Positions 38,063 to 60,269 of a stretch of 64,000 nt of DNA are shown here, in pieces (position 1 is the first letter of the stretch; each line of letters starts with the position of its first letter). The notes beneath the pieces are model-generated. The model was not told the origin of the DNA, did not search any database, and worked only from the letters and a program-made list of their open reading frames with translations. The translations under genes were made by a program, and so were the position numbers. Location of the stretch: the NCBI GenBank assembly GCA_053919585.1, contig CM132786.1, one strand, 5' to 3'. The stretch comes from Euprymna scolopes. Taxonomy: Eukaryota.

Positions 38063-38236
38063 ATAAATTCCACAGCCAAACAACGTCGCATCGTACAATA
38101 GGCATGACGGTCAACCAAGCGGAAGTCTAAGACTCGAGTTTCGCCCTCATTTGGGCTCATCAGTTAGACAAATCCGAACTCAGGATTCGAAACCCGAGCC
38201 TCTTGTATTCGAGGCTACCAACTGAGGAAACGCCCC
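38061..38236 (-). mobile_element. tRNA-derived SINE carrying a hammerhead ribozyme (family A)
   Basis: Minus strand: GGGGCGTTTCCTCAGTTGGTAG (A box), GGTTTCGAATCC (B box), hammerhead, then tail GCTGTGGAATTTATTA running into (TA)n. Confidence 0.85.
38125..38169 (-). ncRNA. Type I hammerhead ribozyme with intact core
   Basis: GUCUAA-CUGAUGA-GCCC AAAUGA GGGC-GAAA-C UCGA G-UC^-UUAGAC. Perfect 6-bp stem I, 4-bp stem II, palindromic minimal stem III and GUC cleavage triplet. Confidence 0.92.
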
Positions 38237-54935: not shown

Positions 54936-56361
54936 AAGTTTATTACAGTTTTGAATGTTCACTTTAGTAATAGGAATGTTGCTATTATGTAATAGGTTTT
55001 CTGCGATATATCGTTACTAATTATCTGTCGTGCGACCGAGCCGTAAACTAATCATAAACAAACTACTTAATATCAATAAACAATAACATCGCATTAGACA
55101 AAATCTTGAAGTCTTATCATGAGTTGATTGAACGGCTTAGATTGTGATATCACAGCGGCTGTTCACGCATAAAATCAATTATTCCTACTTCGCAGGTGGT
55201 ATTTTCTTTCATAATGACATAGAAAAGAAAGATACGTTTTCATCGGTCGAATCATATGAAACTCGGTGCTTTACAATTTATCAAAGACAGTTAATTAATT
55301 TGATTATATAACTATTCTAAAAAATTGTATGGAGGTATTACACAGTTAAAGGTGACTTGTATGTGTTTTAAACAAAAACGTATAATTAAATTGGTATATT
55401 GATTAAAGATTGCGTATTTATGTATCCAGAAAATAATCAGTATAATTCAAAACATTTTCAATTTTGAATAGAAAAAATGTGTTTATTCTTATACAGAAAT
55501 GATAAAAGTAATTTATATTTTGAGTGAAATTTAAAATTAATTGGTTTGAACGGAACGGTAAGATATAAGGGTGATGAATCAGAAAATGGAGATGTATTGA
55601 ATAATAACAGGTGTTCACTTAAGTAATATTAAAGCGTTGAAGAAAAGAGATGCCTGTAGTGACCGGGATACACATCTAGATTACCTGGTTCTAATCCTCA
55701 CCGACCTTATAGCACATGTTTCATTTGTTTCATCTGAACTCTGTTAAAATTTTGATTCTATTTCACAAATGCCTGATAGACCACAACACGTACAGGCAAA
55801 CGAGCGCTTCCACGTAGATTAGAAAAACGCAAATAGCTATCAAGGTTATTTTTAGCTGTGTTAAATTATTTTTTCAAACGTTTACAAATTACTTAAATTT
55901 GCTTTCAGGTTAATTAATGACATGCGTAAAATCTATCTCTATTACGTTAACGTCTTTATTACGCACGCACGNNNNNNNNNNNNNNNNNNNNNNNNNNNNN
56001 NNNNNNNNNNNNNNNNNNNNNNNNNNNNNNNNNNNNNNNNNNNNNNNNNNNNNNNNNNNNNNNNNNNNNNNNNNNNNNNNNNNNNNNNNNNNNNNNNNNN
56101 NNNGAAACTAATTAACCGAAGATTACGAATTTGGGAAAAGCGCACCATGATATAAGGAATCCAAATGTGTACTATATCTAGTACAGTTTGATTTTATACA
56201 GACGGTGTAAATAACAGTTTCCCTTCAAGGAAATGTAATATAGCCTTATACTACACTAGATCCCCGGGATAAGGCATTAAAAATTAGTAACAAAATACAG
56301 TATATTATATAATACACATGTATATAATCAAATCATTATAAATAAGGCAGGGCAATTATAG

Positions 56362-56709
56362 TTGGTTGGTTGGTCGTTTTTGTTTTACGGCATATCAACA
56401 CTTTTCGGGTTAGTTAATGCCGAATCCAAAGATTTTGAAGACAAAATTTTTTAATAGAATATATTTATTGTTTTCACGTCGGTTTCTATTTAACCCATAG
56501 TTGGGACCCTTACAGGTACTACCGCTCCGGGTCAGAGTGGACCTGGGAGCAATTATAATTAAAGGGAGGCTCCACACTCCCCAAAGCCCACAAGCTGGGG
56601 TTTCACCACTGGATATAGTTTAAGGTCATATTCAGGCCCCCCGTTGAGGGACTTTTACCCTCTGCAAGGGAGGGCAGTCGGCTTATTCTAATGCTCCACC
56701 GACAGGGCC
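56362..56709 (-). mobile_element. RTE-associated non-autonomous element or SINE
   Basis: Minus-strand 5' end GCCCTGTCGG..AGAATAAGCCGACTGC..GCAGAGGGTAA resembles RTE-type 5' ends. 3' tail GTTGATATGCCGTAAAAC..(CAAC)n. Confidence 0.55.
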
Positions 56710-56748
56710 TGCAATTATAGTAACCAGAGCTGGAACAAATATTATTCC

Positions 56749-56766
56749 ACACCGTAATCTGAAAAA
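56749..56766 (+). promoter_or_regulatory. snRNA proximal sequence element (PSE)-like box
   Basis: ACACCGTAATCTGAAAAA resembles the TCACCNTNA..TNAAAAG PSE consensus and sits at about -66 to -49 from the U2-like start. Confidence 0.55.
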
Positions 56767-56814
56767 AATCGTATCCTAGTAACATTGTAGCAACGGGTTC
56801 TACTGTTGATTACA

Positions 56815-56861
56815 ATAACCTTCTTGGCCTTCGGGTCAAGATCAAAGTGTAGTATCTGTTC
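56815..56861 (+). ncRNA. U2: U2 snRNA 5' portion (variant), interrupted gene
   Basis: ATAACCTTCTTGGCCTTCGGGTCAAGATCAAAGTGTAGTATCTGTTC versus metazoan U2 AUCGCUUCUCGGCCUU.UGGCUAAGAUCA(A)AGUGUAGUAUCUGUUC. The invariant block AAGATCAAAGTGTAGTATCTGTTC, including GUAGUA, is exact. Confidence 0.88.
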
Positions 56862-57273
56862 CGGCAGATACTGCAAGCAAAGACCATATGTGGGGGCGAC
56901 CCCACATATAAGACCTTGGTCAATGTAGGGGCAACCCTTCATACCAATTGTCACTATCCAGCTCCCCTACTCCCCGGGGAGCTGGTCCCCATTTCCCCTT
57001 CACTCCTCACATTAAAAATCGGCCTTGTGCCTAATTTGCTCGGTGGGGGAGCAAATAAATACCATCTGTTCCGGCAGATACTGCAAGCAAAGACCATATG
57101 TGGGGGCGACCCCACATATAAGACCTTGGTCAATGTAGGGGCAACCCTTCATACCAATTGTCACTATCCAGCTCCCCTACTCCCCGGGGAGTTGGTCCCC
57201 ATTTCCCCTTCCCTCCTCACATTAAAAATCGGCCTTGTGCCTAATTTGCTCGGTGGGGGAGCAAATAAATACC
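56862..57273 (+). mobile_element. Two tandem 202-bp units inserted in U2 (candidate Utopia/Keno-dependent short element or truncated 3'UTRs)
   Basis: ATCTGTTC at 56854-56861, 57064-57071 and 57274-57281 (period 210). Units differ at 2 nt, end in AAATAAATACC, and U2 resumes as ATCTGTTCTT. Confidence 0.75.
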
Positions 57274-60269
57274 ATCTGTTCTTCAGATGCTGCACTTCCA
57301 TTTCTTGTTCTCTTTCGGTGGAGGAGAAATCATTCACGACTGAGACAATTTTTTATTTTTGTACCTTTTCTCCACGTTACAAAACGACCCTGGTGACTAA
57401 CTCTGTCCCGTGGGGAGGCATAGTAAATAGGTAGGTACTGTTGATTTTTTTCCTACAAACTCTGGGCAAAAATGAAACTTAGATGGGTCGACGTCAGGGT
57501 TATATTGTGGATAATCTTTAATAGAGTAGACGCCTTGCATTTTTACTACGTCACTTTTTCAGCAGGATGTAATCGAAATAATACAAACTATTTTTACTGT
57601 TAACGAGAGACATATTTTCTAAGGCTTTTGTCCATAAGAATTGTTTCACATGTAAGTTTCAATAAAATTTTTATTGAAACCCTGATATATCATGAGTGAT
57701 TATTGTATAGGCATATCATTAAAAGTACAATAATATATGGATTTATTGAATCTAAGGTATCGTGGCAGCGTGTAGAGATTGCACTAAAATTTATTAACTT
57801 TTCCTGTGTATAATGTTATATATCTAACCTATTGTCCTCGCTTGTTATAACATGATCAGGAATAGTTTTAGTTATTTGCATGGAAAGTGTAATTTATCCG
57901 ATCGAAACATGTTTCTCATATTTTTGTCGCGTAAATCTGCTAACTTTTACTATCTTTTCTAAGTTGTTGCATATTTTGGAAGTAAAGTTCCACGGCCAAT
58001 TAGACAATGACCATTCTTTACAGGTAAAGTTTATAAAGGGATTTCTCACTTCTCGATCTGTTATGAGATCTTGACGCTGCATACTGCATATATTAAATGC
58101 TTATTAACATATATACATAATTAACTTTATATGTGCAGATTTATTTCCACAGGAAGTAATTGATCTCATTCTTAACGTACATCTACTCCAAGTATGCCAA
58201 ACACGATACGTAGCAGTGCGGGCTATCCCTCGATGCGAGTTATGAAAAGTAGCTGAAAAAATTCCCTGCATTTTGAATGTTTTCTTCGCTAAAATATAAA
58301 CAAGAGATTAGAAAGAAATCTACAGGTCATCTTCATTCGGTAAAGAACTCGACGACGTCTTATTAAGAAACCAAACTACAATTGTAGACTAGACATAGAA
58401 ATCTCTCCTCTGATTCACATATTCTCCAGTATCAGAAGTAGCCTACTATCATTCGAAAAGAAACCGAAAGGCCTTAGAACTGTAATTGGGCTGTAAAAAG
58501 TTGCTAAAAATAGATACGACTACAAACCCAACAAACCTTGTGTGAATATGCAGTGGATGAACTTAATACGAAACACTACTTTTCCACAGGCCTAATGCAC
58601 AGCCGATACAACTGAAAGGGTTTGGACTATAACTATAATGCAAAAATGCATCAAATTTAGTAAAGTGCCATATGTCGTCAAATATACGATTAGGGGACCA
58701 GGTAATACACGGCCTGGTACTCTTTTTTTTAAATACACTTTTTTTAATCGTAAATCTAATACTTTGAAATATTCTCTGAATTTTAAGAGAAAATTAATAA
58801 TGAATGAAATAATCTTAAATATTTTTTAAGTTTCATGGAAGAAAGAAAATATAACCAAAAGAAAGAATTCATCAACAAGGAATGGAGAATGGAGAACCGC
58901 GCGGTAGAATAGCCACACATAATTCCATTCTCTTTTATAAATAAAACTTCCAAGTAACACATATTTATTGATGTTATAATCTGTTGCTGGTTACCATGAT
59001 TTGCTTCCAAGCAGAGGAATGAAGCAACCTATAGTGCCATATTGGTTGCTGTTCCGAAGACGTTCCTTTTAACCATAGTGTGATCACACTAAACCCATAG
59101 TGTAATAACTGTTCGAATCTGGGCATTTCATACTTTCGAAGAAATGGAAGTTACGGTCCTAAAGTTTGTATAATGGTGAAGCCACATGCAATATGCTTAC
59201 CTTTATCGATGCACAGCATTCAGTTTACATAGATCGCTTCTTTTATTTAATATGTGTTATTAGAAACATATTCTGTTTTTACAAACATGTTTAGAATTAA
59301 ATATGTTGACAAAAATTAACCGGTAATGCCATAAAAATGGAATCGATTTTGCCACAAGATCTGTTTTTCTTCAAATATACTTAGCATAAAAAAAATCACC
59401 TGATGGAAAGAAACAAACACTGTCTCCTAATTCAGCAGTGAAAAATAACTTATATCAGTTATATAAACATGTAAAAACGAAAAAGAAAAAAATAACCTAT
59501 TATCCTATTTAATTAAACAATGACTGAACGTATCCGCTAGAGGAAAGTGTGGATCATCAGTCTAGAGAATAGTTCATGTTTACTTGGGGTTAACTGCTTA
59601 TCAAAGCCCGGGAATACGATCAGAAATCGTAAAGCTTGGCTACTGTTTGATTATATTAAAAGACACATCATCAATACCCTATTTATATTTAATTTGAAAA
59701 GGATTATGGGAATAATTTCACGGTATTCGTTTAACAGACAGTTTTAGAAGAGAAAGTCTGCTCACGAACGTTCCCTTCGTTTTAAGCACATATGAGGAAG
59801 TCAGGAAAATTGCCCATGGTTGTTTTAGCTGAATGTTTATTTGTTGCGAAAGTTTTATGTGCGTAACAATAGATAAAAACCCAGTAGATGAAATACAATG
59901 AAACTAACCATAGAACACTGATAGACTCCCGACAGCTTTTTTGTGAGAAAGAGGAAGACCAGAAGGGTAAATGTCCTCGGCTACTAGATCTTGAAGATTA
60001 TTTTGTACCATGTTAAAGCAGGAAACGATACGTTTTGGAGTTACGTCAGAGACGTTTTCTACGTCCCCCCCATCTTAGTACGCATTTGGCTCTTGTACAG
60101 GTTGAGGATTGAGAAAATTTTTAAATTGGTAGAGTGAGGGCACAATATCTTTAAAGTGTGTTTTTTTTGCAACGGGTCTGATTAATGTATCAGGTTTATA
60201 ATAATTTAATATAATTTCTTGAACGAAATAAGAACTATCAGAATCCACACACAATGCAAACAAGTGTAC

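What the first reader, a model, noticed from the sequence alone, without database searches (positions are those of the whole stretch)
56749..57284. U2 snRNA locus interrupted by a tandem pair of short structured elements at the known U2 retrotransposon target site
Seen: a PSE-like box, then U2 nt ~1-46, then [202-bp unit + ATCTGTTC] twice, then ATCTGTTCTT. Each unit ends AAATAAATACC immediately before (A)TCTGTTC. The U2 8-mer occurs three times like a target-site duplication. The units differ at only 2 positions, so the event is recent, and they have no recognisable coding content. Known: Utopia (RLE-type) and Keno (Tx1-type) non-LTR retrotransposons insert in U2 just after GTGTAGTA, with TCTGTTCTT as the 3' flank. 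Inference: this is a ~200-bp non-autonomous U2-specific element. Each insertion would regenerate the target, allowing tandem arrays. Alternatively it is one truncated insertion duplicated by recombination between the TSDs.
Basis: partly seen in the sequence, partly recalled or inferred. Interest (0 to 1): 0.9.

Follow-up and report, generated by a model that had tools for sequence, protein, structure and literature searches.

The report
U2-headed SINE hit twice by relatives
This is not a broken U2 gene but one of tens of thousands of short mollusc retroposons that begin with the first 47 letters of U2 snRNA, and that U2-derived leader has itself been used twice as a landing site by a young 210-letter relative; the habit builds tandem arrays genome-wide and appears undescribed in the papers I could search.

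Summary
A U2-like 5' piece is followed by two 210-bp units that differ at 2 positions. Each unit ends AAATAAATACC and is bounded by ATCTGTTC.

The locus is not a U2 gene. It scores below the Rfam threshold, nothing like U2 nt 48-191 follows, and the upstream DNA is unlike this species' real U2 promoter. An 11-bp duplication, TACTGTTGATT, flanks the whole block. The host is a dispersed SINE: a U2-derived leader plus a ~160-bp module, with at least 24,000 'empty' copies.

The units belong to three equally young families. They sit between leader and module in tens of thousands of mixed arrays. 91% of sampled unit tails abut ATCTGTTC, the Keno/Utopia site in U2.

- A paralogous empty/filled locus pair supports insertion in place.
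- The window's two units share no private mutation.
- Neighbouring units elsewhere are no more alike than random pairs.

The real U2 genes form a 764-bp tandem array that holds ~7-kb APE+RT LINEs. These LINEs carry the same leader junction and a related 3' tail box. They are Keno-like, not Utopia. No unit lies in a genuine U2 gene.

This scan already noted the same system in two other windows of this genome. I rate it a new variant of a known kind (SINEU/Keno).

The parts
56801..56811 (+). 5' copy of the target-site duplication TACTGTTGATT that flanks the whole SINE block
   Evidence: Exact 11-bp match with 57436-57446. Other copies of the base SINE carry their own 11-16 bp non-U2 duplications.
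56812..56853 (+). U2-derived leader (head) of the host SINE: 5 extra bases (ACAAT), then the equivalent of U2 nt 1-38, ending GTGTAGT
   Evidence: Rfam U2 alignment, model positions 1-46. Global alignment to this genome's real U2 shows stem-loop I mutated (CTTGGCCTTCGGGTC against CTCGGCCTTTTGGCT). The same leader precedes at least 24,283 base modules and 18,038 units.
56854..57063 (+). Unit 1 (210 bp): non-autonomous retroposon starting with the U2-derived 8-mer ATCTGTTC and ending with the LINE-like tail ...GGCCTTGTGCCTAATTTGCTCGGTGGGGGAGCAAATAAATACC
   Evidence: TRF. About 16,388 genomic matches to its 43-mer. One difference from the family majority, a C at unit position 129 shared with 5 of 29 sampled copies. 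Fold z = -4.1.
57064..57273 (+). Unit 2 (210 bp): second copy of the same family
   Evidence: One private difference from the family majority, A>C at 57212. Family-level RNA reads carry A there in 56 of 57 reads.
57274..57435 (+). Base module of the host SINE. It starts ATCTGTTCTTCAGATGCTGCA and ends with a diverged tail ...CGACCCTGGTGACTAACTCTGTCCCGTGGGGAGGCATAGTAAATAGGTA(GG)
   Evidence: 91-97% identical (145-155 of about 159 aligned bases) to the terminal modules of 19 of the 21 other base-module loci; the other two are more diverged (138/156) or partly aligned. In at least 24,283 places it is joined directly to the leader with no unit between. Three private substitutions at 57332, 57380 and 57396.
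57436..57446 (+). 3' copy of the target-site duplication TACTGTTGATT
   Evidence: An X1 contig of 2,965 nt runs from 57410 into the unique 3' flank, and a 209-nt contig covers 56645-56854.

Best explanation
The locus is a dispersed copy of a very abundant mollusc SINE. Its first ~47 nt derive from U2 snRNA, so it is SINEU-like. It landed at an ordinary non-U2 site and made the 11-bp duplication TACTGTTGATT.

The leader still carries the U2 sequence GTGTAGT|ATCTGTTC, the site that the U2-homing LINEs Keno and Utopia use in other animals. Two copies of a young 210-bp non-autonomous retroposon later integrated there, one after the other. I infer target-primed reverse transcription by an APE+RT LINE. 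That LINE lives in the genuine U2 tandem array, carries the same U2 leader junction and has a related 3' tail box.

Each integration leaves ATCTGTTC on both sides, so the site is regenerated and arrays can grow.

Shown:
- the anatomy, the duplication, the copy numbers and the junction statistics;
- the LINEs in the U2 array;
- an empty/filled paralogous locus pair.

Inferred:
- that the units entered after the host SINE;
- that these particular LINEs supply the machinery;
- the way the 5' junction is resolved (probably homology of the cDNA end with ATCTGTTC..CAGATNCTGCA).
For: 1. Not a gene. The U2 score is below threshold and only nt 1-46 truly match. The flanks are unlike real U2 flanks or the U2 3' part, and the duplication is verified.
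2. Family size. Leader joined directly to base module: 24,283 hits. Leader joined to unit: 18,038. Unit tail joined to unit: 30,905. Unit 43-mer: 16,388. All reversed-pattern controls gave 0. Base copies have their own 11-16 bp duplications.
3. Site specificity. 148 of 162 sampled unit tails abut ATCTGTTC. The remainder abut other points of the leader or a 5'-truncated unit, which is a hallmark of target-primed reverse transcription.
4. Insertion in place. L005 carries two units and L036 carries none. Their flanks are 97.5-99.1% identical over about 1.3 kb on each side.
5. Independence of the two window units. They share no private change and differ at a family-polymorphic site. Four adjacent same-family pairs elsewhere differ by 3-6 nt, while random pairs have a median of 5.
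6. Relative age. The host module has 3 private changes in 160 bp, against 1 in 420 bp for the units.
7. Arrays mix three equally young families in no fixed order.
8. Partner. At least 1,201 intact U2 genes lie in a 764-bp array. That array is interrupted by 7.1-7.6 kb elements on the U2 strand. Their ORF2 has Exo_endo_phos + RVT_1 + zf-RVT. Their 5' junction is U2 nt 1-47|CAGTGC. Their tails carry GGCCTT(T)GTGCCTAA + hairpin + AAATACC, as the units do. The LINE also forms head-to-tail arrays.
Against: - The duplication flanks the whole block, so the composite could have arrived in one piece.
- The age contrast is only suggestive (Fisher p = 0.066).
- The empty/filled pair could be a precise deletion or an ectopic gene conversion.
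- No unit is found in a genuine U2 gene. The four LINE copies I read end against U2 nt 1 or ~24, not nt 39. The shared-machinery link therefore rests on a 14-17 nt tail box, the terminal AAATACC and the common leader junction.
- No LINE with a tail identical to the unit's was found.
- Tx1-clade membership of the RT was not tested by phylogeny.
- Short-read contigs cannot span the dimer, so the assembly of this particular pair is not independently verified.
Confidence: 0.72

Rival explanations
1. The whole block (leader + two units + base module) was retrotransposed as one composite RNA from a master dimer elsewhere. The tandem pair would then predate this locus.
For: The 11-bp duplication flanks the whole block. 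Composites can move: L006 is leader + three units flanked by an ~18-bp duplication. Some arrays contain internal leaders directly behind a unit tail.
Against: The base module carries 3 private substitutions in 160 bp, while the two units carry 1 in 420 bp. A paralogous locus pair differs only by the presence of two units. Empty leader-module copies are the commonest state, with 24,283 hits.
Confidence: 0.14
2. One unit was inserted and then duplicated at the DNA level, by unequal crossing-over or replication slippage between the ATCTGTTC..CAGAT repeats, or by ectopic gene conversion from another array.
For: Some very large arrays show regular higher-order spacing, for example 218/218/~1,000-1,200 bp at G000:C1:19.35 Mb. 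That pattern is typical of satellite-like amplification. The two units differ by only 2 nt.
Against: The units share no private mutation. One of the two differences is an allele carried by 5 of 29 other family members. Adjacent same-family pairs elsewhere differ by 3-6 nt, no less than random pairs (median 5). Arrays are mosaics of three families rather than homogeneous runs.
Confidence: 0.1
3. One reading: a genuine U2 snRNA gene or pseudogene with its own promoter element, interrupted by a U2-gene-specific element.
For: U2 nt 1-46 are recognisable and the junction is the Keno/Utopia site (PMC4640811).
Against: There is no U2 3' part and no promoter similarity, and a non-U2 duplication encloses the block. 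The same leader + module occurs at least 24,283 times. Genuine U2 genes lie in a 764-bp array on another chromosome and carry no such units.
Confidence: 0.02
4. The tandem pair is an assembly artefact, caused by mis-assembly of a high-copy repeat.
For: The unit is present in more than 16,000 copies, and the short-read contigs I could lay do not span the pair.
Against: The two units differ at two positions, one of them private to this copy. Such dimers and longer arrays occur tens of thousands of times in a chromosome-scale assembly. Both unique flank junctions are confirmed by independent contigs.
Confidence: 0.02

Closest known systems
SINEU (SINEs with U1/U2 snRNA-derived heads; Kojima 2015, PMC4494074)
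   Same: Short non-autonomous retroposon whose 5' head is the 5' part of U2 snRNA. It is linked to Tx1-type (Keno-related) LINEs, some of which carry the same U2 head. There is no internal pol III promoter. Tandem pairs that sandwich a target-site duplication were interpreted there too as sequential insertions.
   Different: SINEU has a poly(A) tail and prefers a Mariner transposon. Here the elements end in a specific LINE-like tail (…AAATACC / …AAATAGGTA) without poly(A). The preferred target is the family's own U2-derived leader, giving heterogeneous arrays in tens of thousands of places. The candidate partner LINEs still sit in the genuine U2 array.
Keno (U2 snRNA gene-specific LINEs of the Tx1 clade; Kojima & Fujiwara 2004, as cited in PMC4494074 and PMC4640811)
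   Same: APE + RT LINEs inserted in U2 snRNA genes. The units' 3' junction, |(A)TCTGTTC, is the Keno/Utopia site.
   Different: Keno is reported from vertebrates, lancelet and cnidarians. The four LINE copies read here abut U2 nt 1 or ~24 at their 3' ends, and every one has U2 nt 1-47 at its 5' end. Clade membership was not tested by phylogeny. Huge non-autonomous families derived from Keno have not been described, as far as I could find.
Utopia (RLE-type U2-specific non-LTR retrotransposons; PMC4640811)
   Same: Same insertion site in U2. Occasional tandem insertion is reported (Utopia-1_NVit).
   Different: Utopia encodes a restriction-like endonuclease in a single ORF. The LINEs here have two ORFs and an APE-type endonuclease.
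Internally deleted non-autonomous derivatives of site-specific LINEs, such as the R2-derived SIDE elements of Drosophila (from my own knowledge, not checked here)
   Same: Short elements that keep the 5' and 3' ends of a target-specific LINE and use its target site.
   Different: Those stay within rDNA and reach low copy numbers. Here the target travels with the element, so the family has spread through the whole genome.

Membership tests
U2 spliceosomal snRNA gene (Rfam RF00004) | Covariance-model score at or above the gathering threshold over the full model | tested here: not met
   40.2 bits against a gathering score of 46. Only model positions 1-46 are truly matched; the rest is forced into the unit.
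U2 spliceosomal snRNA gene (Rfam RF00004) | Presence of U2 nt 48-191 (stem-loops II-IV and Sm site) and the species' own upstream promoter region | tested here: not met
   No significant similarity of the downstream module to U2 nt 47-191, or of the upstream 200 nt to the genuine U2 repeat.
SINEU (Kojima 2015) | 5' head derived from U1 or U2 snRNA, on a short non-coding dispersed element flanked by target-site duplications | tested here: met
   The head aligns to U2 nt 1-47. At least 24,283 copies. Duplications of 11-18 bp.
SINEU (Kojima 2015) | 3' poly(A) tail | tested here: not met
   Copies end in ...GTAAATAGGTA or ...AAATAAATACC, directly followed by the duplication or by ATCTGTTC.
SINEU (Kojima 2015) | Sequence relatedness to the crocodilian SINEU-1/2/3 bodies | not testable with these tools
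Keno / Tx1-clade U2-specific LINE (applies to the partner elements L061-L064) | ORF2 with an APE-type endonuclease and reverse transcriptase | tested here: met
   Exo_endo_phos 9.5e-13, RVT_1 5.7e-32. zf-RVT 1.2e-4 at 23.2 bits is below Pfam's 27.5-bit cut-off.
Keno / Tx1-clade U2-specific LINE (applies to the partner elements L061-L064) | Insertion inside U2 snRNA genes | tested here: met
   Four insertions interrupt the 764-bp U2 array on the U2 strand.
Keno / Tx1-clade U2-specific LINE (applies to the partner elements L061-L064) | 3' flank TCTGTTCTT... (the site shared with Utopia) | tested here: inconclusive
   The units and SINE arrays use it (148 of 162 tails). The four LINE copies read here abut U2 nt 1 (three copies) or nt ~24 (one copy).
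Keno / Tx1-clade U2-specific LINE (applies to the partner elements L061-L064) | RT phylogeny placing it within the Tx1 clade next to Keno | not tested
   No reference Tx1/Keno proteins were available. The database relatives are unnamed.
Utopia (RLE-type) | PD-(D/E)xK restriction-like endonuclease C-terminal to the RT, single ORF | tested here: not met
   The N-terminal endonuclease is APE-type and there are two ORFs.

The most novel reading that the evidence does not exclude
The U2-derived leader is a portable homing site. A U2-gene-homing LINE lineage gave rise to SINEs that carry a copy of the LINE's own target in their first 47 nt. Every dispersed copy then becomes a new landing pad for further units and for the LINE itself. 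This would have built tens of thousands of heterogeneous insertion arrays outside the U2 genes: a self-seeding, site-specific retrotransposition system on a genomic scale.
Probability: 0.55. Interest if true: 0.7.

Novelty: new variant of a known kind. Interest (0 to 1): 0.55.

Why it matters
snRNA-headed SINEs are known only from crocodilians. How they acquire their heads and how they are transcribed are open questions (PMC4494074). It holds all the pieces together and apparently young:
- genuine U2 genes;
- U2-resident APE+RT LINEs with a U2 leader;
- SINEs with the same leader.

It also shows a consequence not described before: the leader keeps working as an integration site, so the family targets itself and builds arrays. 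That makes three things directly testable:
- the origin of snRNA heads, by co-transcription with or homology to the target;
- how much sequence a Tx1-type machinery needs to recognise its site;
- how site-specific elements escape a low-copy target.

A compact, precisely targeted LINE/SINE pair is also of practical interest as a model for site-directed integration. For this window alone the result is more modest: one ordinary member of that family, correctly spotted but misread as a U2 gene.

Tried and rejected
- A DNA-mode search of the genome with the unit found nothing, because very common words are skipped. Pattern searches worked instead.
- The Rfam U2 family search of the whole genome failed twice. 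I located the real U2 genes by pattern. The vertebrate-type GATCAAGTGTAG form has 0 hits. The form with one extra A has 1,201. The extra A in the SINE leader is therefore native to this species' U2 and is not a family-specific mutation.
- Looked for units inside genuine U2 genes: none.
- Looked for named relatives of the LINE ORF2: 77 hits, the closer ones (the full-length matches 50-62% identical) all unnamed, so there is no clade assignment. One relative's contig (L065) shows no U2 flanks.
- Laid reads and contigs of four runs. Everything between the flanks is family-level signal. RNA reads come from both strands and mostly carry other copies' letters. I draw no conclusion on expression of this copy or on the assembly of the dimer.
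- Tested head-proximal 'polarised growth' of arrays. The support is weak: rho = 0.27, p = 0.036, n = 62. Young units selected by an exact 43-mer lie anywhere in arrays.
- SINE tail hairpins alone are not more stable than shuffles (z about -0.6). Structural homology with the LINE tail hairpin (z = -4.25) is therefore not shown.
- No tRNA was found in the repeat just upstream. The hammerhead at 38.1 kb is not in a local direct repeat.
The dispersed LINE copies, the LINE tandem arrays and more SINE arrays could be counted but not read.
Full report
**What is in the window**

Reading 56400-57700 shows the following, in order:
- unique DNA;
- the 11-mer TACTGTTGATT (56801-56811);
- ACAAT, then a U2-like stretch ending GTGTAGT (to 56853);
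- two 210-bp units (56854-57063 and 57064-57273), each beginning ATCTGTTC and ending AAATAAATACC;
- a third ATCTGTTC that opens a ~160-bp segment ending ...GTAAATAGGTA(GG);
- TACTGTTGATT again (57436-57446).

Tandem Repeats Finder reports period 210, 2.0 copies and 99% identity. The two units differ at two positions. Rfam's U2 model matches 56816-56940 at 40.2 bits, below the gathering score of 46. Only model positions 1-46 are convincingly aligned.

The 'U2 locus' is not:
- the downstream segment has no significant similarity to U2 nt 47-191;
- the upstream 200 nt have none to the upstream region of the genuine U2 genes of this genome;
- the 11-bp direct repeat encloses the whole block, like the target-site duplication of a retroposon.

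**The host is a SINE with a U2-derived leader**

The genome is 5.9 Gb.

The leader joined directly to the ~160-bp module, with no unit between, occurs 24,283 times at up to 2 mismatches. Ten such copies that I read carry different flanks and their own duplications of 11-16 bp (ACACTATAAGAAC, ATTAACAAGTTT, ACAATAAATAGATCC and others). Their 5' ends are variably truncated within the leader. This is a dispersed LINE-dependent retroposon whose head is U2 nt 1-47.

The extra A in GATCAAAGTGTAG is native to this species' U2. The vertebrate-type sequence has no hit. The form with the extra A has 1,201 hits.

**The units are a separate, young, very abundant set of non-autonomous elements**

A 43-mer of the unit has 16,388 matches at up to 3 mismatches.

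In 30 sampled loci the units mostly lie in tandem arrays. BLAST and clustering of 188 array members show three families with similar between-locus identity (~0.97):
- family A, about 198-218 bp;
- family B, the 210-bp unit of this finding;
- family C, 194 bp.

All three share the first ~22-31 nt (ATCTGTTC-NNN-CAGATRCTGCA) and the last ~60 nt, but have different middles. They are mixed in no fixed order between a leader and, in 12 of the sampled arrays, a terminal base module.

Genome-wide there are 18,038 leader-unit junctions and 30,905 unit-unit junctions of this type.

Of 162 unit tails in the sample:
- 148 are followed by ATCTGTTC;
- 4 are followed by a complete new leader;
- 3 are followed by (G)ATCAAAG (U2 nt ~27);
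- 3 are followed by a 5'-truncated unit;
- the remaining 4 are other or diverged junctions.

The dominant junction...GTGTAGT(A)|TCTGTTC, is the site reported for both Keno and Utopia in U2 genes. The paper gives TCTGTTCT... as the 3' flank (PMC4640811).

**Were the two window units inserted here, one after the other?**

Four lines of evidence say probably yes.

1. L005 and L036 are paralogous loci, 97.5-99.1% identical over about 1.3 kb on either side. L036 has leader + module. L005 has leader + two units + module. The difference is exactly the two units.
2. Each window unit is one change away from the majority of 29 sampled family members, and at different positions. Unit 1 carries a C shared with 5 of the 29. 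Unit 2 carries a private A>C. They share no private change.
3. Four adjacent same-family pairs in other arrays differ by 3-6 nt, the same as random pairs from different loci (median 5). Neighbours are therefore not recent local duplicates.
4. The host module has three private substitutions in 160 bp, against one in the 420 bp of the units. RNA reads of the family carry the majority letters at exactly those positions. The contrast is suggestive only (Fisher p = 0.066).

None of this excludes that a composite was retrotransposed as a whole. L006 shows that leader + three units can move together, with an ~18-bp duplication. Very large arrays with regular higher-order spacing point to additional satellite-like amplification.

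**The coding partner**

The genuine U2 genes form a 764-bp tandem array on G000:C9. Gaps in that array hold 7.1-7.6 kb elements on the U2 strand. They have two ORFs, of 766/880 aa and 1149/1145 aa. ORF2 has Exo_endo_phos, RVT_1 and a zf-RVT match that falls below Pfam's cut-off. This is APE-type, so Keno/Tx1-like, not Utopia.

In all four copies the 5' junction is U2 nt 1-47 followed by CAGTGC.... The 3' ends read ...GGCCTT(T)GTGCCTAA(T/G)TT-hairpin-...AAATACC|ATCGCTTC (U2 nt 1) or ...AAATAAATA|AGATCAAAG (U2 nt ~24).

The units' tail is ...GGCCTTGTGCCTAATTT-GCTCGGTGGGGGAGC-AAATAAATACC. LINEs and units therefore share the leader junction, a 14-17-nt tail box and the terminal AAATACC. The LINE's pre-terminal hairpin is very stable (z = -4.25). 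The short SINE tails are not distinguishable from shuffles on their own.

The leader-LINE junction occurs 39 times, about half of them away from the U2 array. The LINE tail occurs 87 times, including head-to-tail LINE arrays of ~7.0 kb period on several chromosomes. The LINE thus shows the same array-building habit.

Database relatives of ORF2 (the full-length ones 50-62% identical) are unnamed, so Tx1-clade membership remains untested.

**A qualification of 'U2-specific'**

No unit tail is followed by genuine U2 nt 39-65 (0 hits at up to 3 mismatches). No genuine U2 head is followed by a unit: there are 50 hits, all with 2 mismatches of the SINE-leader type, all dispersed, and none in the U2 array. 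In this assembly the units occupy only U2-derived leaders of their own superfamily.

Two explanations remain open:
- such insertions are purged from the U2 array;
- integration needs the SINE-specific bases after ATCTGTTC (..CAGATRCTGCA). These are shared by units and base module but not by U2.

**Mechanism proposed (inferred)**

- The LINE endonuclease nicks the bottom strand in front of ATCTGTTC.
- Reverse transcription starts at the unit's tail.
- The cDNA end, which carries the complement of ATCTGTTC..CAGAT, or of the whole leader, pairs with the target. The 5' junction is then seamless and the 8-mer appears on both sides.
- Minor junctions at U2 nt ~1 and ~27 suggest some latitude in nick or priming position.

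**Polarity**

In my sample, divergence rises only weakly with distance from the leader (rho = 0.27, p = 0.036, n = 62). Units ascertained as young lie anywhere in arrays. I regard polarity as weakly supported. Internal junctions, each of which regenerates the site, seem to be used as well.

**Comparison with what is known**

SINEU (PMC4494074) is the closest match. It comprises U1/U2-headed SINEs tied to Keno-related Tx1 LINEs, some of which carry the same head, and it includes tandem pairs that sandwich a duplication, explained as sequential insertion.

The differences are as follows:
- SINEU is reported only from crocodilians;
- it has poly(A) tails;
- it prefers a Mariner transposon;
- it is old, and no LINE sharing its tail was found.

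Here the elements have specific tails without poly(A). They target their own leader, form arrays in tens of thousands of places, and coexist with intact-looking candidate partner LINEs in the U2 array.

Searches of the paper library found no description of U2-headed SINEs in molluscs. Two earlier notes of this scan, on other windows of the same genome, describe the same system. My results agree with them, except that I find the polarity weak.

**Verdict**

The finding is one ordinary member of an unusual and apparently undescribed self-targeting SINE/LINE system: a new variant of a known kind.

Noticed in passing
window 38125-38169 (- strand): A type I hammerhead ribozyme motif: Rfam RF00163, 45.9 bits against a gathering score of 34, E = 1.3e-8. 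No direct repeat of 40 bp or more lies within about 1.7 kb on either side. It is therefore not an obvious tandem retrozyme. It may belong to a Penelope-like element.
   Followed up: partly
window 56500-56663: Just upstream of the finding lies another very high-copy repeat. It is GC-rich and reaches a summed contig word-depth of about 1e5, against about 20 in the unique flanks. No tRNA was found in it and no Rfam family matched the part of it that was scanned, 56000-58000.
   Followed up: partly
G000:C9:168.87-168.97 Mb (L041-L064): The genuine U2 snRNA genes form a tandem array with a 764-bp period. There are at least 1,201 intact 5' regions genome-wide, most of those listed being in this array. 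At least four ~7-kb LINE insertions interrupt the array, each preceded by U2 nt 1-47 and followed by U2 from nt 1 or nt ~24.
   Followed up: yes
G000:C19:152706159-152792023 and similar clusters on C41, C38, C18, C10, C13 and C30: The tail of the U2-array LINE recurs at ~7.0-kb spacing, with 13 copies in a row on C19. This indicates head-to-tail tandem arrays of the LINE itself, away from the U2 array. The sequence could not be fetched.
   Followed up: no
G000:C1:19353548-19363299: A unit array of more than 10 kb shows regular higher-order spacing (218, 218, then ~1,000-1,200 bp, repeated). This suggests satellite-like amplification on top of insertion.
   Followed up: no
L001, L003, L005, L014, L030, L033, L036-L039 (3' ends of base modules): The DNA immediately after ...AAATAGGT very often begins ACAAT. 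In several copies ACAAT is part of the target-site duplication. This suggests a target or priming preference of the base SINE for ACAAT. In the window, ACAAT sits instead between the 5' duplication and the leader (56812-56816).
   Followed up: partly
runs X7, X8, X12 and X16 (organisms B-E): DNA runs labelled as other species hold a third or more of the sampled words of this stretch. Only organism B (run X7) was laid: it holds the units at high depth but almost lacks the last ~40 nt of the base module. The unit families may therefore be shared among related species while the base SINE tail differs.
   Followed up: no
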